Positions 26,682-34,722 of a stretch of DNA of 64,000 nucleotides are shown here, one piece after another (the stretch's first letter is position 1; each line of letters starts with the position of its first letter). The notes under the pieces were generated by a model that did no database searches, was not told the DNA's origin, and saw only the letters and a list, made by a program, of their open reading frames with translations. The translations under genes and the position numbers were made by a program. Where the stretch lies: IMG/VR virus record IMGVR_UViG_3300020084_000003, positions 186,001 through 250,000 of that record. One strand, given 5' to 3'.

Positions 26682-27122
26682 TTACTCGTTATCGTTTTTA
26701 AATACGACCAATGTTTCTACCTTATTACGTGCATTACCATTTTGGTCTGTATATGATACCGATCTTGTCCAACCGGGAGTTCTCAAACCAACTGCTTTAA
26801 ATTCTGCATTGGATGCTTCCTCAGTAGTTACAATTGAAAGTGTAGCTGCGTATGAAGGCTGTTTTACCCAAGATGGAACATCTTTTCTATAAAGCGCGCC
26901 TGCAACTTCATCTTCCAATTCAGCAACAGTAATCGTGTCTTCGGTTAGACCCAAGACAATGATATTTTCTCCGGTTCCATCGTTATTAGCTTTAACGATA
27001 TCTCCGACTCTTAAAACAGTTCTCAAGTCAACGCCGCCAGTTACAACAATTTCTGTTCCGCCAGCATCGCCTGCAAATACACCTTGAATAAGATCGTATT
27101 CGGTTTTATCCCATAAGCTCAT
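26682..27122 (-). CDS. Putative virion structural protein
   Basis: MSLW N-terminus and PGW...YTD.NGN.R.KVETLV C-terminus, as in myovirus virion proteins. Confidence 0.55.
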   Translation of the reverse strand: MSLWDKTEYDLIQGVFAGDAGGTEIVVTGGVDLRTVLRVGDIVKANNDGTGENIIVLGLTEDTITVAELEDEVAGALYRKDVPSWVKQPSYAATLSIVTTEEASNAEFKAVGLRTPGWTRSVSYTDQNGNARNKVETLVVFKNDNE

Positions 27123-27123
27123 T

Positions 27124-27318
27124 TTAGTTTCCTTTTCTAGTTCTAGGTTTTCTAGTGGTCTTTGGTTTTTCTTCCGCGACCACCGGTTTCTCTTCTTTCT
27201 TCTCTTCTTTCTTTTCTTCTACTACTGGCTTCACAACTTCGATAACAGCATCTACAGACGTAACACCTTCGATTCTTTTTTGTCTAAGTTGGTCAACTAA
27301 ATTTTTGAATTTTGACAT
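27124..27318 (-). CDS. Small Lys/Glu-rich protein
   Basis: EEKK repeats and basic tail; RBS AAGGA. Confidence 0.55.
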   Translation of the reverse strand: MSKFKNLVDQLRQKRIEGVTSVDAVIEVVKPVVEEKKEEKKEEKPVVAEEKPKTTRKPRTRKGN

Positions 27319-27675
27319 TTATACATCCTTACTTTCATTAATACCCTTGCTAAAAGTTTTAGAAAACGAAGTTAATACTCCTAACACGTTATCGTATCTT
27401 TTATTTATCTTTATAACAGGTATATCAACTCCTAATTTTTTTGCTGCTAACCACCTGTGATGCCCATCTATAACTCTGTTATCTTTGGAAACCAAAATGG
27501 TCTTATCTTTTATTTTATCATACTCTCTAATGAGTGAATCGACTTTGCTAAGGTTAAACTCCGATTGTGTTGGCTTTAAACTCTCTGCTGGAATGTTACA
27601 CTCTTCATATTTTACGCCCATTCTAGTTAGAAAAGATTTCAGCCATCTAAAATCTTTAGTAGAAACCTGTGGCAT
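27319..27675 (-). CDS. ParB/Sulfiredoxin-like domain; probably the -1 frameshift extension of the upstream gene (frame open from 27704)
   Basis: LKPTQ, ILVSKD.RVIDGHHRW; upstream in-frame VDTCGIKRAD has no start codon. Confidence 0.75.
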   Translation of the reverse strand: MPQVSTKDFRWLKSFLTRMGVKYEECNIPAESLKPTQSEFNLSKVDSLIREYDKIKDKTILVSKDNRVIDGHHRWLAAKKLGVDIPVIKINKRYDNVLGVLTSFSKTFSKGINESKDV

Positions 27676-27711
27676 ATCGGCTCTTTTTATCCCACAGGTA
27701 TCTACTTTTTT
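27665..27711 (-). promoter_or_regulatory. Predicted -1 programmed ribosomal frameshift signal
   Basis: In-frame A AAA AAG (27711-27705) then UAG; 5-nt spacer; 8-bp stem ACCUGUGG/CCACAGGU. Confidence 0.7.
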
Positions 27712-28604
27712 GGAAGGTCTTCTTTTTTAACCAAATAAGCTTCTGTGAATATTGAATTAATATCTGTAGAATCTTTTAGTTCTTCAATACCTTCTTTAAT
27801 AGACTTTTTACCTGCAATCTTTTTAACAACGCTTTTAGGTGTTGTATTCTTAACCTGTTTAACTTCACCTGATTTATCAGTCTTGACAGTTGGTTTTGGC
27901 TTGACAGCAGATTTTTTGTCTGTTGTAGAGCTTACACCGGACTTAGCCAAAGCTGTTTTAAGTCTCTCATTTTCAATTTGTTTAACTTTCGGAACCATTT
28001 TTGAAGAAAGTCTCTGTAGGACAGAATTAGGTATTCTTGCCATTCTTTTGTCAATAGTCATTTTTTCAGAAGGTGACAAATCACTATATTTCTTGTTACC
28101 AGTAAATCTATCTCTCAAAGTTGATCTTGCGCGTCTTGTGGCTCTCTTACCGATTTGATCCATGTTTGCGCGTCTACGGTTTGCTCTTTTTCTAGCAGTA
28201 GAAATTTTTGTTTTGTAACGACGCATAACCATCGCACGTTTTCTTCTAGCTGCAATATCTAGAACTCTACCTTCTTCAATGATAGAATAACCTTGAATTT
28301 CTTCAATCATGGCAGAAAGTTCTGAATATAGAATATCTGCAATTTCATGCAAATCTTCGGACAAATCCTCAACGAAATCATCAAAAGATTCGTCTAAAAC
28401 ATCTACAATCAGATCGGCAGTGTTCAACGTGGTATTTTCGTTAATTTTGATTGCATCCATCTCTAGAATGGTCTTGCAAAAATCTTGAATAGTTTTTTCC
28501 ATTGTTGGCCTCAATATTATATATTTGCTGTTATCAACATCCTGCCCGTCTTTTTTCTTAGATGTTTTAGACTTTTTGTTTTTGTCATTAGAAATTAGAG
28601 ACAT
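27702..28604 (-). CDS. Prohead-core-like (gp68-type) basic head protein
   Basis: Acidic N-terminus with I/LxE sites, then Arg-rich ARRKRAMVMRR...KRATRRAR...LSPSEK..IDKR domain; late promoter upstream. Confidence 0.55.
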   Translation of the reverse strand: MSLISNDKNKKSKTSKKKDGQDVDNSKYIILRPTMEKTIQDFCKTILEMDAIKINENTTLNTADLIVDVLDESFDDFVEDLSEDLHEIADILYSELSAMIEEIQGYSIIEEGRVLDIAARRKRAMVMRRYKTKISTARKRANRRRANMDQIGKRATRRARSTLRDRFTGNKKYSDLSPSEKMTIDKRMARIPNSVLQRLSSKMVPKVKQIENERLKTALAKSGVSSTTDKKSAVKPKPTVKTDKSGEVKQVKNTTPKSVVKKIAGKKSIKEGIEELKDSTDINSIFTEAYLVKKEDLPKK

Positions 28605-28637: not shown

Positions 28638-28645
28638 TATTTATA
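28638..28645 (-). promoter_or_regulatory. T4-type late promoter
   Basis: TATAAATA ending 34 nt upstream of ATG 28604. Confidence 0.75.
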
Positions 28646-28667
28646 CATCTTAGACTTCTTGGCAAAT

Positions 28668-28694
28668 AAAAAAAGCCCCACTAGGGGGCTTTTT
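28668..28694. terminator. Intrinsic terminator, bidirectional form
   Basis: AAAAAAAGCCCC-ACTAG-GGGGCTTTTT. Confidence 0.8.
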
Positions 28695-28695
28695 C

Positions 28696-30621
28696 TTACA
28701 TATAGTATTTACCGTTCACATAGTTGACCAATTGTCTCTGTCCGTTCGCATATATGATGCAATTTGTGTGGCACCATGAGCTACTACCTCTATTGTATTT
28801 CAAATCAAGCTTTGACATGGTTCCTACTCTAAACACTCCACGCTGAATTGCCGGTGTATGGCTATGACCGATTACACAGTCACCATATACTTCTTCTAAA
28901 CCATTCAGTGACGGCCTTGCACCATTTATTCCAAGATCACCATGCTCCGATAGCTCCACGTCCGCTATTTTCAGCTTTGTGTTTCTATCCAAAAACACCA
29001 TGTTTTCCAAAATAAACATCACTTCTTCTGTGTCTTGATCTAGAGCATGGAACATGCCAGACTGCAAATCATCCATACCATCTAGCATATCTACTGCTAT
29101 TTTCAAGCTGATATAGTGGTTTTGAGGATCAGTCACATATCTACCAGATTTTAGATATCTTGTCAGAAACTCATCATGGTTTGATTTAACGATATAAGCC
29201 TTGCCAAATACGTCAAGAGATTCGTAAATTTTCTTAACCAATTTATAGGTTAGAACAAGCTCAGATTTAAGATCGCCGCGACTTGCCTTTGATCTTTCAT
29301 ATTTTTCATAAATTGTTTCAATGTGATGTGAGATTGATTCACCGTCAAAAATATCATGCAGGAATATGTTCTCAATATCAAAGTCTTTGAAATCTTCAAC
29401 AAAGCTGTTCACAGCATCCACGTCAACATTAACACCATGAATATCACCGAAAACAATGTTCATAGGGACTTGTTCTGTAGTGCCATCTGCATTATATTTA
29501 ACACCAAGATCAATGAAGTTTCCTTCTTCGTCAGCTTGAATTTGTCTAAAGTGGAAATGTTTTTCGTCTTCTATCTCTACAATGACTGCACCCAACATAT
29601 GGTCATGCGAAGCAATGTATGACAGTCTTTTACTAACAAATGAGTTATTGTGGAAATAATCTCCGGTAGTGCATGAGCCTGTGGTCATAATGCTATAGTT
29701 TCTTCCACGACCGTTGCCGCTTGGTCTATAATCTAGGAATTGTTTCGGGCTTGCAAAAATATATGATCCGCCACGTTTACCAATTCTTGCCAGACCTGTA
29801 GTTGACTTGATTTGCTTGGCTGAAACTTGGATGCTACACAAGAATATGTTTTCATTAAGATCAACGTCATCAGTTACGAAGTTGTATATCGGCTTTTCAA
29901 ATTCTCTGTCAAAAATGGCAGATTTGTTTTCAAAGCTGTTAGTGACGCTTTCACATGGAAGGATTACAATTTGTGCATCTCTTTCTTGTGCATATGTCTT
30001 AATGGCTGAAATAAAGCCTTCATGAACCTTGAAATCTGCAACTGCTGTAGTGACAATATATCTTTTACCGATATAATCACCGCTCTCTAGACCTTCTCTA
30101 TTGAGAATTGATTGCAATGTAGTGAAATTTTCCTTGATATTGTCAGGATAATTCACTTCCATGAAATCGTGCAATTTTGATAGATTTCCAAATGAAGATG
30201 ATATTGTGCTTTTTGTGATACCAAAATCAACAAAGTCGTGCATAGCAGGTAGACGCTTCACCTTATCAATAATCTTCAAGTATGAATTGATTACGAATTG
30301 ACGCTTTTCTTCTGCCAAATCTCTAACATCTTCATCGCTTTCAACATCATTGGTTCTTTCTTTTGGAAGAACGTTTCTTGTAACTTCCTCAGATATACTA
30401 TCATCTTCAAGAATCATTTTGTAAAGACGATCTTTTCCAAAGCCAAAATAGTATTCAACTTTTTTCTTGGTAATACCAGAGCTTTTCAATTCATCATAGG
30501 TAGGATTTCTACCATATTTCTTACATTGCTCTGTAAAGGTTTCAATTAACCTTTTCTTTTTATATTCCAAGTCATCATCTTTGGAATATATCTCTATCTG
30601 AACTTTATCTTCACTAGACAT
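28696..30621 (-). CDS. T5 A1-like metallophosphoesterase nuclease with N-terminal helical repeats
   Basis: YIVTTA, TTGSCT, GAVIVE, FRQI, GDIHG, HDIFDG, SNHDEFL, HGDLG.NGAR, GHSHTP, SSW. Confidence 0.75.
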   Translation of the reverse strand: MSSEDKVQIEIYSKDDDLEYKKKRLIETFTEQCKKYGRNPTYDELKSSGITKKKVEYYFGFGKDRLYKMILEDDSISEEVTRNVLPKERTNDVESDEDVRDLAEEKRQFVINSYLKIIDKVKRLPAMHDFVDFGITKSTISSSFGNLSKLHDFMEVNYPDNIKENFTTLQSILNREGLESGDYIGKRYIVTTAVADFKVHEGFISAIKTYAQERDAQIVILPCESVTNSFENKSAIFDREFEKPIYNFVTDDVDLNENIFLCSIQVSAKQIKSTTGLARIGKRGGSYIFASPKQFLDYRPSGNGRGRNYSIMTTGSCTTGDYFHNNSFVSKRLSYIASHDHMLGAVIVEIEDEKHFHFRQIQADEEGNFIDLGVKYNADGTTEQVPMNIVFGDIHGVNVDVDAVNSFVEDFKDFDIENIFLHDIFDGESISHHIETIYEKYERSKASRGDLKSELVLTYKLVKKIYESLDVFGKAYIVKSNHDEFLTRYLKSGRYVTDPQNHYISLKIAVDMLDGMDDLQSGMFHALDQDTEEVMFILENMVFLDRNTKLKIADVELSEHGDLGINGARPSLNGLEEVYGDCVIGHSHTPAIQRGVFRVGTMSKLDLKYNRGSSSWCHTNCIIYANGQRQLVNYVNGKYYM

Positions 30622-33732: not shown

Positions 33733-34722
33733 TTATTTCTTTTTTACTAGATTTTGGAAATAATCTAGTTCTTCATCGTCATCATCATCTGAGATTGAAG
33801 AAGATTTATTAGAGGCTTTTGGCTCATCTTCTTCCTCATCAATATCTGAAAGATCAAATTTTGACTTTGAAGACTTCGGCTCTTTGCGCTCTTCTGTTTT
33901 ATTTTCTTCTTCATCGTCATCATCAAATGACAAGGAACGCTTTGAACCACCATTGCTTCTAACGTCTGATTTATTTCCTAGAACAATGTCTAGTCTTTCT
34001 TTAAGTTGCTCGTAGGTCTTGAATGACTCCGGTGCAATCAATTCAGAAAGATTGTGACGCTGGTTCCAGATTTCCTCAATTTCACTGTCGCTCTCTGCAA
34101 TAGGAGTTGTCTTTCTATCAAATTCAGAATCGTCATAGTTATTGAAACCTGCAACGTTCTTAATTCTTAGACGGAAATTAGCACCTTCCCAAAGATCAAA
34201 TGGGTTTACTGCTTCGTCGCCTTCATACTCTGGTTTAGACATTTTAGTAATTTTATCGAAAATCTTCTTGCCAAAGCGGAACATAAAGACTTTGCCTTCA
34301 TTTGAAGGATTGCCGGGGTCTTTGACGACCAAAATATTGGCAACGAAAGTTCTTTTCCTTTTTTGCTTTTCGCTAACAATTTTCTTATCTTCATCATTGC
34401 CAGAATTCCACAACTTATTATTAAGTTCTGAAACTGGATCAGGTTCGCCATTTAAAGTTGTTCTTGATTTTTCAATATACCACAATCCGGTCGGACCTTT
34501 GAAACCATGTTCAAAATAGTCAACTACGGATGGATCATTATCGGATTCAACATCACCTTGAAGGAATCGGATAATTGCAGAACCATTTTTATTAGCGTCT
34601 AGAGTTGGGGTCCAATATTTTCCCGCGTCTGGGTTCTTTGCGCTAGAGTTTACGCTGTCTAGTTGTTCAGCTAGTTTTTGTGCAGCTTTATCTCTGTTTT
34701 TCTTCATGTTCTTAAAGGACAT
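33733..34722 (-). CDS. gp32: Single-stranded DNA-binding protein
   Basis: AIIRFL, HGFKG...WYIE, ANILVVKDP.NP.NEGKVF, FGKKIFDKI, GANFRL, NYDDSEF; acidic tail. Confidence 0.95.
   Translation of the reverse strand: MSFKNMKKNRDKAAQKLAEQLDSVNSSAKNPDAGKYWTPTLDANKNGSAIIRFLQGDVESDNDPSVVDYFEHGFKGPTGLWYIEKSRTTLNGEPDPVSELNNKLWNSGNDEDKKIVSEKQKRKRTFVANILVVKDPGNPSNEGKVFMFRFGKKIFDKITKMSKPEYEGDEAVNPFDLWEGANFRLRIKNVAGFNNYDDSEFDRKTTPIAESDSEIEEIWNQRHNLSELIAPESFKTYEQLKERLDIVLGNKSDVRSNGGSKRSLSFDDDDEEENKTEERKEPKSSKSKFDLSDIDEEEDEPKASNKSSSISDDDDDEELDYFQNLVKKK

What the first reader, a model, noticed from the sequence alone, without database searches (positions are those of the whole stretch)
27319..28604. Predicted -1 programmed frameshift fusing a prohead-core-like protein to a ParB/Srx domain
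Seen: ORF 28604-27702 ends CCA AAA AAG UAG, so the dnaX/IS-type slippery heptamer A AAA AAG (27711-27705) sits in the correct phase immediately before the stop. After a 5-nt spacer comes a perfect 8-bp stem, ACCUGUGG (27699-27692) / CCACAGGU (27672-27665), which also encloses the annotated ATG of the next ORF. The -1 frame reads VDTCGIKRAD-MPQV straight into the ParB-like domain. It has no start codon after its upstream stop, and the MPQV ATG has a poor RBS. From memory, a GI.R..MPQ motif begins such domains, so those residues look coding. Inference: two products, a 300-aa core protein and a ~428-aa fusion that loads a fixed minor amount of ParB/Srx enzyme (NTPase/nuclease fold) into the head, possibly for injection. 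Frameshifting is well known in tail chaperones and some capsid genes, but I do not know it for T4-like core proteins.
Basis: partly seen in the sequence, partly recalled or inferred. Interest (0 to 1): 0.82.

Follow-up and report, generated by a model that had tools for sequence, protein, structure and literature searches.

The report
Frameshift fusing phage protein to ParB domain
A large T4-like phage very probably uses a conserved -1 ribosomal frameshift to make, besides a 300-residue late protein, a 428-residue version that carries a ParB/sulfiredoxin-like domain. In related phages that domain carries its own T4-type head-targeting leader, so the frameshift looks like a Gag-Pol-style way of loading an enzyme-like cargo into the phage head.

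Summary
The in-phase A AAA AAG sits directly before the TAG. A hairpin starts 5 nt later. The -1 frame is open, has no start codon, and reads VDTCGIKRAD into MPQV.

Comparative data strongly support a real -1 programmed frameshift:
- Eight further lineages keep CCA AAA AAR in phase and keep the hairpin, which is really 11 bp and built from rare synonymous codons.
- The eight codons before the ATG evolve as coding sequence (pN/pS 0.18).
- Homology to stand-alone ParB-like proteins runs across the shift site.
- One relative (P0021) has the same two genes fused in frame with the predicted junction. It keeps heptamer and hairpin, so that a -1 slip there would give a dnaX-like short form.
- Stenotrophomonas phage DLP6 has both modules in one 722-residue protein.
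- An independent contig has the identical A-run.

Most stand-alone homologues (99 of 114) begin with a T4 capsid-targeting-sequence-like leader. The upstream gene has a conserved T4 late-promoter motif. Head loading is therefore plausible but only inferred. The "prohead core" label has no direct homology support. The mechanism is a known kind; the biological use appears new.

The parts
28667..28690 (-). Intrinsic terminator of the upstream 641-aa gene (AGCCCC-CTAGT-GGGGCT followed by a T-run). It isolates the transcription unit that starts with the 300-aa gene.
   Evidence: Read directly. Equivalent hairpin plus T-run is visible upstream of the homologous gene in relatives. The consensus scan did not list it.
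28638..28645 (-). TATAAATA, identical to the T4 late-promoter consensus, 34 nt before the ATG of the 300-aa gene.
   Evidence: present 32-43 nt upstream of the homologous gene in 8 of 9 lineages examined. There are 10 copies on the coding strand of the window against 1 on the other strand. Reading it as a late promoter rests on established T4 knowledge.
27702..28604 (-). 0-frame ORF, 300 aa (short product). It has a Lys-rich disordered leader, an acidic helical part, a conserved Arg/Lys-rich helical module and a tail ending in DLPKK.
   Evidence: AF2 gives helices over residues 35-221 with pLDDT above 90; the N-terminus and residues 222-300 have low confidence.
27954..28430 (-). Conserved helical basic module (about aa 59-217). 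It is shared with more than 1900 clusters of mostly 400-1150-aa modular phage proteins, many with an N-terminal cytidylyltransferase-like domain.
   Evidence: hhalign against DLP6 AAY80_068 (98.6%, E 5e-16) and against the L016 898-aa protein (99.6%, E 1.5e-24). Profile search. Pfam scan of representatives. BFVD fold hits.
27705..27711 (-). Slippery heptamer A AAA AAG in X XXY YYZ phase (codons CCA AAA AAG).
   Evidence: Conserved as A AAA AAG or A AAA AAA in phase in L005, L006, L007/8/9, L010, L011, L012, L019 and L029. The chance that P-K-K is coded this way is about 0.35 per lineage.
27702..27704 (-). 0-frame stop TAG directly after the heptamer.
   Evidence: It is TAG or TAA in most relatives, GAG in L011 (stop 4 codons later), and absent in the in-frame fusion L019.
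27665..27699 (-). Hairpin 5 nt after the heptamer: an 11-position stem (27699-27689 with 27675-27665, 10 paired here) and a 13-nt loop. The 3' arm contains the ATG of the ParB ORF.
   Evidence: 10-11 of 11 positions pair in all 9 heptamer-bearing lineages, against 3-8 of 11 in 11 homologues without a heptamer. The stem uses the rare codons ACC (0.18 of Thr) and CAG (0.20 of Gln); the one lineage with ACT has CAA opposite it.
27676..27705 (-). Ten -1-frame codons (VDTCGIKRAD) that link the slip site to Met of MPQV. They can only be translated after a frameshift.
   Evidence: No start codon in this frame in any lineage. pS 0.556 and pN 0.100 (ratio 0.18) against 1.97 and 0.61 in the other frames; third positions vary in 8 of 8 codons. 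The consensus of stand-alone homologues is KDTLGIKRDK-MPQV.
27319..27675 (-). ParB/Srx-fold domain ORF (118 aa from the ATG). It forms the C-terminal 118 residues of the predicted 428-aa fusion.
   Evidence: PHROG ParB-like hits. AF2 pLDDT 89.3, with top Foldseek PDB hits pNOB8 ParB-N, Atu1540, sulfiredoxin and Noc. 424 phage records hold homologues.
27454..27468 (-). DGHHR motif, the invariant core of the domain.
   Evidence: Invariant in alignments A1, A3 and A5. It aligns with DGHHRW of the ParB/Srx-fold free serine kinase and of 1vk1.

Best explanation
Proposed mechanism. Genes 28604-27702 and 27675-27319 are one late transcription unit decoded in two ways. Most ribosomes stop at the TAG and make the 300-aa protein. 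A fraction pause at the hairpin 5 nt downstream and slip back one base on A AAA AAG. They then read VDTCGIKRAD and continue through the ParB/Srx-fold domain, giving a 428-aa fusion.

What is shown:
- the signals are present and conserved;
- the linker evolves as coding sequence;
- homology runs across the shift site;
- natural in-frame fusions exist.

What is inferred:
- The ParB/Srx domain is a head-internal cargo. Its free-standing homologues in T4-like phages carry their own capsid-targeting leader. Here that leader is replaced by attachment to the upstream protein, itself a member of a family with a Lys-rich leader ending in a (L/I)xE-A protease-type motif.
- The frameshift therefore sets a fixed minority of cargo-bearing copies, as Gag-Pol does in retroviruses.
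- The cargo may be freed by the prohead protease and delivered with the DNA.
- The frameshift efficiency, the enzymatic activity of the domain, and any additional initiation at the internal ATG are unknown.

The confidence of 0.8 refers to the frameshift itself. For the head-loading role I would give about 0.5.
For: 1. Signals. The heptamer is in phase, the stop is adjacent, and the hairpin follows after 5 nt.

2. Conservation of the heptamer. Eight further lineages at 38-70% protein identity keep CCA AAA AAR in phase and keep ParB in the -1 frame with no start codon there. Codon usage gives about 0.35 per lineage by chance.

3. Hairpin. It is kept at 10-11 of 11 pairs in all heptamer-bearing lineages, against 3-8 of 11 in 11 homologues without a heptamer. 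It is built with rare synonymous codons and shows one compensatory C-G to U-A change.

4. Coding signature. pN/pS is 0.18 in the -1 frame before the ATG, with Arg coded as AGA, CGG or AGG.

5. Homology across the junction. The window reads K.(E/D).P..(K/V)DT.GIKR..MPQV. The stand-alone consensus is KVE.P.AKDTLGIKRDKMPQV. The Pro at -13 lies in the 0 frame and DT.GIKR in the -1 frame.

6. Natural fusions. P0021 (L019) is an in-frame fusion with junction DLPKK-SETCGISRVD-MPQV, made by one extra base outside the A-run. It keeps heptamer and hairpin, and a -1 slip there gives V-stop, the dnaX arrangement. DLP6 AAY80_068 and P0100, P0155, P0159 and P0104 carry both modules in one chain.

7. Linked loss. 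The closest relative, L004, lacks ParB and also lacks the DLPKK tail.

8. Not an assembly error. An independent contig is identical over 1265 nt.

9. Fold. AF2 models residues CGIKRAD as an ordered part of the fold (pLDDT about 89 for residues 11-20).

10. Head link.
- 99 of 114 stand-alone homologues start with a leader like the T4 CTS MKTYQEFIAE (PMC8442874; PMC5694885).
- The TATAAATA motif is conserved upstream.
- Homologues are annotated as structural or virion proteins in Marzo, Dickeya XF4 and JA15, rabagast, phiC725A and PEp14.
Against: - No protein or ribosome data exist; the phage is known only from metagenomes.
- Covariation in the hairpin is not statistically significant: one compensatory pair, and 227 of 500 shuffles do as well. 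Both stem arms overlap conserved amino-acid motifs.
- All heptamer-bearing lineages form one clade, so the heptamer-hairpin association is essentially one evolutionary event.
- A weak SD-like GAG/GGG sits in the loop 5 nt before the ATG, so a free 118-aa ParB could also be made.
- The relative L030 has no heptamer and starts ParB at MPQ behind a different 14-bp hairpin. This shows that hairpin-gated independent translation occurs in the family and that the GIKR segment is dispensable there.
- In L016 the two genes are separate.
- No conserved dnaX-like upstream SD stimulator is present.
- The host's tRNA-Lys set is unknown.
- The upstream protein has no detectable similarity to known T4 core proteins.
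Confidence: 0.8

Rival explanations
1. There are two separate proteins and no frameshift. The hairpin sequesters the ParB start codon, and ParB is translated only by coupling, when ribosomes terminating at the TAG 5 nt upstream melt the stem. The heptamer is just a Pro-Lys-Lys tail.
For: - The ATG lies in the 3' arm of the stem, and a weak SD-like GAG/GGG lies in the loop.
- L030 and L031 lack a heptamer yet have a 14-bp hairpin over the ParB ATG, 25 nt after the upstream stop.
- L016 has separate genes with an ATGA overlap.
Against: - It does not explain the purifying selection on the eight untranslated codons (pN/pS 0.18).
- It does not explain their homology to the N-terminal segment of stand-alone proteins.
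- It does not explain the strict conservation of CCA AAA AAR in phase.
- It does not explain the in-frame fusion P0021, where the hairpin is kept with a compensatory change although nothing terminates upstream.
- It does not explain the joint loss of the DLPKK tail and ParB in L004.
- Coupling could nevertheless coexist with frameshifting.
Confidence: 0.07
2. The same 428-aa fusion is made, but by transcriptional slippage. RNA polymerase adds one extra A in the A-run, so a subset of mRNAs has the two ORFs in frame.
For: Inserting one A gives exactly the same protein. Relatives have A7 runs (L005, L006, L011, L012, L029). Slippage of this kind is known for Thermus dnaX and for some IS elements (general knowledge).
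Against: - The window, L007, L009, L010 and L019 have only six A's followed by G. Known slippage-prone runs are usually 9 or more (general knowledge).
- The conserved hairpin at 5 nt and the strict X XXY YYZ phase are features of ribosomal, not transcriptional, slippage.
- Phase would not matter for polymerase slippage, yet it is invariant.
Confidence: 0.05
3. It is an artefact or decay: a sequencing or assembly error in the A-run, or a recent frameshift mutation that broke an originally fused gene, leaving a truncated protein and a remnant ParB ORF.
For: A homopolymer lies at the junction, and an in-frame version exists in a relative (P0021).
Against: - An independent contig from another sample is identical.
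- Eight further lineages from different samples and assemblers share the same -1 arrangement.
- The downstream ORF shows no decay and is 59-69% identical between lineages.
- The extra base in the in-frame version lies outside the A-run.
Confidence: 0.02

Closest known systems
E. coli dnaX -1 frameshift (tau/gamma)
   Same: It has the identical heptamer A AAA AAG and a downstream stem-loop a few nucleotides away, and it gives a long and a short product from one gene. The relative L019 even has the dnaX logic: the 0 frame gives the long form, and a -1 slip gives one extra residue and a stop.
   Different: In the window the logic is reversed: the 0 frame gives the short form and the -1 frame the long one. 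No conserved upstream Shine-Dalgarno-like stimulator is present. The proteins are unrelated. No Rfam frameshift element matches.
-1/+1 frameshifts in phage structural genes (lambda G/GT tail chaperone; Lactobacillus phage A2 and T7/T3 major capsid; SPP1 and PSA tail and capsid proteins; cited in PMC5221750)
   Same: A slippery site sits at the 3' end of a late gene, often AAAAAA(A/G) next to the stop and often followed by a stem-loop. It yields a fixed minor fraction of a C-terminally extended virion protein.
   Different: Those extensions are chaperone, decoration or Ig-like parts of capsid or tail proteins. Here the extension is an enzyme-like ParB/Srx domain that is a free-standing, separately targeted protein in related phages. 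The carrier is not a capsid or tail protein, and the locus lies between replication and lysis genes.
Gag-Pol frameshifting of retroviruses and totiviruses
   Same: This is a functional analogy. A -1 slip at the end of a particle-associated protein appends an enzyme, so that a set fraction is co-packaged.
   Different: There is no homology. Packaging of the carrier is only inferred here, and the system is a DNA phage with bacterial-type signals.
T4 internal proteins and Alt, targeted to the prohead core by the capsid targeting sequence MKTYQEFIAE and trimmed by gp21 after Glu (PMC8442874, PMC5694885, PMC3012670)
   Same: Of 114 stand-alone homologues of the ParB-like domain, 99 start with M-K-x-F-x-x-Y-I-x-E-type leaders. 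Relatives of the carrier family have a Lys-rich leader ending in P-x-(L/I)-x-E-A.
   Different: The window's ParB ORF has no leader of its own, and the carrier's own motif is degenerate (PTME). Neither protein is homologous to T4 IPI-III or Alt. Virion presence has not been tested.
Packaged multi-domain anti-restriction or ejection proteins with a ParB-like module (P1 DarB-like proteins, for example Erwinia phage PEp14 gp27, 4914 aa)
   Same: The same ParB-like subfamily domain (37% identity, E 2e-14) is embedded in giant proteins encoded in virion modules and annotated DarB-like, internal virion, or structural.
   Different: Those are single huge ORFs of podophages with methylase, helicase or transglycosylase domains. 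Here the domain is attached to a small helical carrier through recoding.

Membership tests
-1 programmed ribosomal frameshift site (dnaX / IS3 / phage late-gene type) | Slippery heptamer X XXY YYZ in the 0-frame phase | tested here: met
   A AAA AAG at 27711-27705, read as CC[A AAA AAG] TAG.
-1 programmed ribosomal frameshift site (dnaX / IS3 / phage late-gene type) | Stable downstream RNA structure about 5-9 nt after the heptamer | tested here: met
   The hairpin starts 5 nt after the heptamer. It folds at -14.3 kcal/mol for the 35-nt core and -19.5 for the 65-nt segment, z -4.1. The structure is conserved, but covariation is not significant.
-1 programmed ribosomal frameshift site (dnaX / IS3 / phage late-gene type) | The -1 ORF overlaps the site, lacks its own initiation upstream and shows a coding signature up to the slip site | tested here: met
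   No ATG, GTG or TTG in any of 8 lineages. pN/pS is 0.18 against 1.97 and 0.61 in the other frames. Homology to stand-alone proteins crosses the site.
-1 programmed ribosomal frameshift site (dnaX / IS3 / phage late-gene type) | Heptamer and frame relationship conserved in diverged homologues | tested here: met
   Nine lineages keep CCA AAA AAR in phase. The expected chance is about 0.35 per lineage.
-1 programmed ribosomal frameshift site (dnaX / IS3 / phage late-gene type) | Upstream Shine-Dalgarno-like stimulator (dnaX-specific, not general) | tested here: not met
   No conserved GGAGG-like element lies 10-14 nt upstream in the aligned junctions.
-1 programmed ribosomal frameshift site (dnaX / IS3 / phage late-gene type) | Trans-frame protein detected | not testable with these tools
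   The phage is uncultured and known only from metagenomes (IMGVR_UViG_3300020084_000003).
ParB/Srx superfamily (ParB N-terminal-like domain) | ParB/Srx fold | tested here: met
   AF2 gives pLDDT 89.3 and pTM 0.82. The top 23 Foldseek PDB hits are all ParB-N, Atu1540, sulfiredoxin, Noc or ParB-CDP, with probability 0.91-1.00 and TM about 0.45.
ParB/Srx superfamily (ParB N-terminal-like domain) | Pfam ParBc or ParBc_2 score above the gathering threshold | tested here: not met
   ParBc_2 scores 13.9 bits against a cut-off of 23.6. Several homologous clusters carry a precomputed PF02195 hit, and PHROG ParB-like families match at E 4e-7.
ParB/Srx superfamily (ParB N-terminal-like domain) | Conserved active-site-region motif (DGHHR here, as in ParB/Srx-fold serine kinase and 1vk1) | tested here: met
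   D87, G88, H89 and H90 are invariant, and R91 is nearly invariant, in 69 sequences. The motif aligns to DGHHRW of 5x0j and 1vk1.
ParB/Srx superfamily (ParB N-terminal-like domain) | Nucleotide binding or hydrolysis, or nuclease activity | not testable with these tools
   Needs biochemistry.
T4-type internal head proteins (CTS-targeted) | N-terminal capsid targeting sequence resembling MKTYQEFIAE and ending in (L/I)xE | tested here: not met
   The window ParB ORF has no N-terminus of its own beyond MPQV. However, 99 of 114 stand-alone homologues have such a leader (CTS sequence from PMC8442874).
T4-type internal head proteins (CTS-targeted) | Presence in purified heads and ejection with the DNA | not testable with these tools
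   Only depositor annotations of homologues are available (virion-associated, structural, internal virion).
T4 prohead core / scaffold proteins (gp22, gp67, gp68) | Sequence or fold similarity to a known core protein | tested here: not met
   Pfam gives nothing. PHROG gives only the unknown-function phrog_23027. tblastn against phages gives nothing. Foldseek against PDB gives nothing. BFVD hits are uncharacterised or CTase-like proteins.
T4 prohead core / scaffold proteins (gp22, gp67, gp68) | Late expression | tested here: inconclusive
   A conserved TATAAATA lies 32-43 nt upstream. It is a motif only; there are no expression data.
Tail assembly chaperone G/GT frameshift | Position between the major tail protein and tape measure genes | tested here: not met
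   The neighbours are a T5 A1-like 'DNA transfer' protein, DnaB-like helicase and UvsX upstream, and small ORFs, endolysin and spanin downstream.

The most novel reading that the evidence does not exclude
T4-like phages have several interchangeable ways of putting the same ParB/Srx cargo into the head:
- a free protein with its own capsid-targeting leader;
- a constitutive in-frame fusion to a leader-bearing modular carrier;
- a frameshift-dosed fusion.

The window represents the third solution, a Gag-Pol-like stoichiometric loader in a tailed phage. One relative has flipped the same signals to the dnaX polarity. If so, recoding sets the copy number of an injected enzyme, and the upstream helical basic module is a previously unrecognised head-incorporation or DNA-binding carrier shared by thousands of phage proteins.
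Probability: 0.45. Interest if true: 0.75.

Novelty: new variant of a known kind. Interest (0 to 1): 0.62.

Why it matters
Programmed frameshifts in tailed phages are known mainly for tail chaperones and for decoration-type extensions of capsid and tail proteins. Here the same device appears to attach an enzyme-like domain to a carrier. That domain normally travels as an internal head protein.

This would be a phage counterpart of Gag-Pol. It would also be a natural example of how cargo dose in a capsid can be set by RNA signals.

The comparison also exposes two large uncharacterised groups:
- ParB/Srx-like small proteins with T4-type capsid-targeting leaders;
- a helical basic module present in about 1900 clusters of modular phage proteins.

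Both are candidates for injected host-takeover or anti-defence functions.

On the practical side, gene callers annotate the ParB ORF from MPQV in every lineage. They miss the fusion and ten coding residues.

Tried and rejected
- DNA-level search of the locus against GenBank phages found nothing. tblastn of the 300-aa protein also found nothing.
- Pfam on the 300-aa protein gave only noise.
- Rfam gave no frameshift-element match at the junction.
- Foldseek of the 300-aa model against PDB gave only chance helical hits. The ESM Atlas gave only unnamed viral clusters and CTase-like look-alikes.
- The hairpin covariation test was not significant with 8 sequences, so the structure argument rests on synonymous-codon choice and on clade specificity instead.
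- I tried to link the carrier family to the cytidylyltransferases seen in cyanophage virion proteomes (PMC10665884). tblastn showed that only the CTase-proximal segment, not the basic module, matches those cyanophage genes. The link is weak and I did not rely on it.
- Papers on phiM9 and DLP6 say nothing about these proteins.
- Literature searches for ParB-like internal head proteins, or for frameshifts in internal or ejection proteins, found no prior description.
- I considered a non-AUG start in the linker. ATA is not conserved and is GTT in three lineages, so this was rejected.
- I considered the second in-phase heptamer at 33745. It was rejected as chance.
Full report
**1. What is in the sequence**

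On the minus strand, ORF 28604-27702 (300 aa) ends CCA AAA AAG TAG. The heptamer A AAA AAG (27711-27705) is in X XXY YYZ phase and abuts the stop.

It extends to an 11-position stem (27699-27689 with 27675-27665). In the window it has one G.G mismatch, and its 3' arm contains the ATG of the next ORF. The 65-nt segment folds at -19.5 kcal/mol with z = -4.1.

The frame of the next ORF (27675-27319, 118 aa) is -1 relative to the first. It is open from 27726 and has no ATG, GTG or TTG before the ATG. It reads VDTCGIKRAD before MPQV.

On the coding strand of the window, 13 such heptamers lie in phase inside long ORFs. Only two are near a stop, and the other one leads nowhere.

The window is part of a 284,776-bp viral contig. 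A second contig from another sample is identical over 1265 nt, including the A-run.

**2. Relatives: the junction is conserved**

Homologues of both proteins were found in metagenome assemblies, and the DNA around them was fetched.

The lineages L005/L006/L012, L007/L008/L009, L010, L011 and L029 are 47-52% identical in the upstream protein where it was scored (41-50% in the alignment) and 59-69% identical in ParB. All of them keep these features:
- CCA AAA AAG or CCA AAA AAA in the same phase;
- a stop directly after it (in L011, four codons later);
- ParB in the -1 frame, 38 nt from CCA to ATG;
- no start codon in that frame.

With the window's codon usage, Pro-Lys-Lys would be written in a slip-compatible way only about 35% of the time per lineage.

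**3. The linker is coding**

The eight codons before the ATG read T/S-C-G-I/V-K/N/S-R-A/V-D in all lineages. All eight third positions vary, and Arg is written AGA, CGG or AGG. In this frame pS is 0.556 and pN is 0.100 (ratio 0.18). The other two frames give ratios of 1.97 and 0.61.

A profile search found 444 ParB-like proteins. The 114 examined are mostly 141-147 aa long and have their own start 26-28 residues before MPQ.

The conceptual window fusion is ...K-K-E-D-L-P-K-K | V-D-T-C-G-I-K-R-A-D | M-P-Q-V. It matches this consensus on both sides of the slip site: the Pro at -13 in the 0 frame, and D-T-x-G-I-K-R in the -1 frame. Homology that continues from one frame into another is the classical signature of recoding.

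AF2 models the CGIKRAD residues as an ordered part of the domain.

**4. Natural fusions and a natural deletion**

A profile of the upstream protein found 1932 clusters, mostly 400-1150-aa proteins. Five of the top 151 carry the ParB-like domain further downstream.

P0021 (420 aa, locus L019) is the same gene pair fused in frame. Its junction is D-L-P-K-K-S-E-T-C-G-I-S-R-V-D-M-P-Q-V. The fusion is made by one extra base after AAG, not inside the A-run.

Strikingly, L019 keeps A AAA AAG in phase and keeps a perfect 11-bp hairpin with a compensatory C-G to U-A change. A -1 slip there reads GTC TGA, which is one residue and then a stop. So the same long and short products would be made with the polarity of E. 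coli dnaX.

Stenotrophomonas phage DLP6 AAY80_068 (722 aa) contains three parts in one chain:
- a cytidylyltransferase-like domain;
- the carrier module (hhalign 98.6%, E 5e-16);
- the ParB-like domain (39% identity, aligned from RRCDMPQ).

In a 146-kb marine contig (L016), an 898-aa carrier-family protein sits directly upstream of a stand-alone ParB gene with an ATGA overlap.

The closest relative of the window (L004, 70% identity) lacks the ParB gene, and its upstream ORF lacks the DLPKK tail. The tail, the slip site and ParB therefore behave as one cassette.

**5. The hairpin**

In all nine heptamer-bearing lineages, 10-11 of the 11 stem positions pair. In eleven homologues with their own start or with distant in-frame fusions, only 3-8 pair, and the hairpin is not predicted.

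The stem arms overlap the conserved residues T-C-G-I and M-P-Q-V, so amino-acid constraint explains part of the conservation. The formal covariation test is not significant.

Three observations point the other way:
- The stem uses ACC for Thr and CAG for Gln, which make up only 18% and 20% of those codons in the window's genes.
- The single lineage with ACT has CAA opposite it.
- The clade has Cys (TGT or TGC) where stand-alone proteins have Leu or Lys. In most lineages TGT pairs with the Pro-Gln codons opposite and completes the complementarity; in L010, TGC leaves a C.A mismatch.

I take the structure to be selected, with the caveat that all these lineages form one clade.

**6. What the two proteins are**

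The downstream domain has a ParB/Srx fold. AF2 gives pLDDT 89.3, and the best PDB matches are pNOB8 ParB-N, Atu1540, sulfiredoxin and Noc. It has an invariant DGHHR motif. It falls below Pfam's threshold.

Among the stand-alone homologues, 99 of 114 begin with a leader of the form M-K-x-F-x-x-Y-I-x-E. This closely resembles the T4 capsid targeting sequence MKTYQEFIAE, which directs internal proteins into the prohead core and is removed by gp21 after Glu (PMC8442874; PMC5694885; PMC3012670).

Homologous domains also occur in other contexts:
- inside giant DarB-like proteins of virion modules;
- in proteins annotated as structural, virion-associated or internal virion proteins.

The upstream protein has these features:
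- a disordered Lys-rich leader;
- a confidently predicted helical region, residues 35-221;
- no PDB counterpart;
- BFVD matches to uncharacterised proteins of phiM12, DLP6 and CTase-like or DUF5824 proteins.

In 61 of 148 family representatives the leader ends in P-x-(L/I)-x-E, followed by Ala in 47. This is the kind of site T4-type prohead proteases cut. In the window's own clade the motif is degenerate (PTME).

The gene is preceded by a terminator and by TATAAATA, the T4 late-promoter consensus. That motif is conserved 32-43 nt upstream in eight lineages.

The surrounding genome is T4-like in its replication and lysis genes: UvsX, a DnaB-like helicase, primase, thymidylate synthase, NrdA, endolysin and a T4-type spanin, with gp32 upstream in the syntenic loci of relatives.

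**7. Interpretation**

Supported by all available comparative tests: a -1 ribosomal frameshift produces a 428-aa fusion alongside the 300-aa protein.

Inferred: the ParB/Srx domain is head-internal cargo, and the upstream protein is the vehicle. The frameshift replaces the cargo's own targeting leader and fixes the ratio of loaded to unloaded carrier. Sites of the form (I/L)-F-E just upstream of the junction in several lineages could allow release by the prohead protease, but this is speculative.

Not excluded: additional translation of a free 118-aa ParB from the ATG by coupling. This is suggested by the SD-like triplet in the loop and by L030, where a heptamer-less relative gates the ParB start with a different 14-bp hairpin.

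Less likely rivals: transcriptional slippage would give the same protein but fits the A6G runs and the strict phase poorly. Assembly error is excluded by the independent assemblies.

**8. Novelty**

The mechanism is of a well-known kind: a dnaX-type heptamer and hairpin, as also seen in phage late-gene frameshifts (PMC5221750).

I found no description of a frameshift that attaches an enzyme-like internal-protein cargo to a carrier in a tailed phage. I also found no description of the ParB/Srx-like proteins with capsid-targeting leaders.

I therefore rate it a new variant of a known kind. Interest is moderate to high, limited by the absence of any protein-level evidence.

Noticed in passing
window 28638-28645 (-) and 28667-28690 (-): TATAAATA, the T4 late-promoter consensus, follows an intrinsic terminator just upstream of the 300-aa gene. 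The motif occurs 10 times on the coding strand of the window against once on the other strand. Some copies lie just upstream of large ORFs (63334, 44872, 34805); others are further from or overlap an ORF start (50700, 58464). It is conserved upstream of the homologous gene in eight lineages.
   Followed up: partly
window 33739-33745 (-), ORF 34722-33733: This is a second in-phase A AAA AAG, one codon before the stop of a 329-aa ORF whose counterpart at this position in related loci is gp32-like. The -1 frame adds only three codons before TGA, and a terminator follows. It is judged a chance occurrence.
   Followed up: yes
L004:6001-6960 (92-kb contig, closest relative): The ParB gene is absent, and the upstream ORF ends ...INKDE without the DLPKK tail. 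The 64-aa gene that follows ParB in the window comes directly after it. The ParB cassette is therefore optional within this phage group.
   Followed up: partly
L030:3262-3350 and L031 (homologue P0041): A heptamer-less relative starts its 103-aa ParB ORF exactly at MPQ, in the +1 frame, 25 nt after the upstream stop. The ATG is buried in a perfect 14-bp hairpin unrelated in sequence to the window's stem. Hairpin-gated translation of the ParB gene therefore seems to recur in the family.
   Followed up: partly
L019:921-987 (protein P0021): The in-frame fused version of the gene pair retains the A AAA AAG heptamer and a perfect hairpin. A -1 slip there would terminate after one codon (GTC TGA). 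This is the mirror image of the window's arrangement and is analogous to E. coli dnaX.
   Followed up: partly
proteins P0015-P0276 (stand-alone ParB-like proteins, about 143 aa; for example L016:5001-5432): This is a large, mostly marine or freshwater group of small ParB/Srx-like proteins whose first ten residues mimic the T4 capsid targeting sequence. They are often encoded next to a CTase-carrier protein and an endolysin. The papers searched do not describe them as internal head proteins.
   Followed up: partly
proteins P0022-P0166 (carrier family): About 1900 clusters of modular phage proteins share a common build: a Lys-rich leader, often ending P-x-(L/I)-x-E-A; a cytidylyltransferase-like HxGH domain; the basic helical module; and variable C-terminal domains (DUF5824, DUF6321, DUF5872, ParB-like). 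Their function is unknown.
   Followed up: partly
window 28696-30621 (-): The 641-aa protein upstream matches PHROG 1745, 'DNA transfer protein' (E 4e-92, residues 179-639).
   Followed up: no
window 26682-27122 (-) and 27124-27318 (-): The two small ORFs after ParB are conserved in synteny in all relatives. One is 64 aa with a Lys/Glu-rich tail. The other is 146 aa with a partial match to PHROG 613, 'head protein' (E 5e-9). They may belong to the same late unit.
   Followed up: no
window 1-64000: ARAGORN finds no tRNA genes in the window. G+C content is 38.5%.
   Followed up: yes
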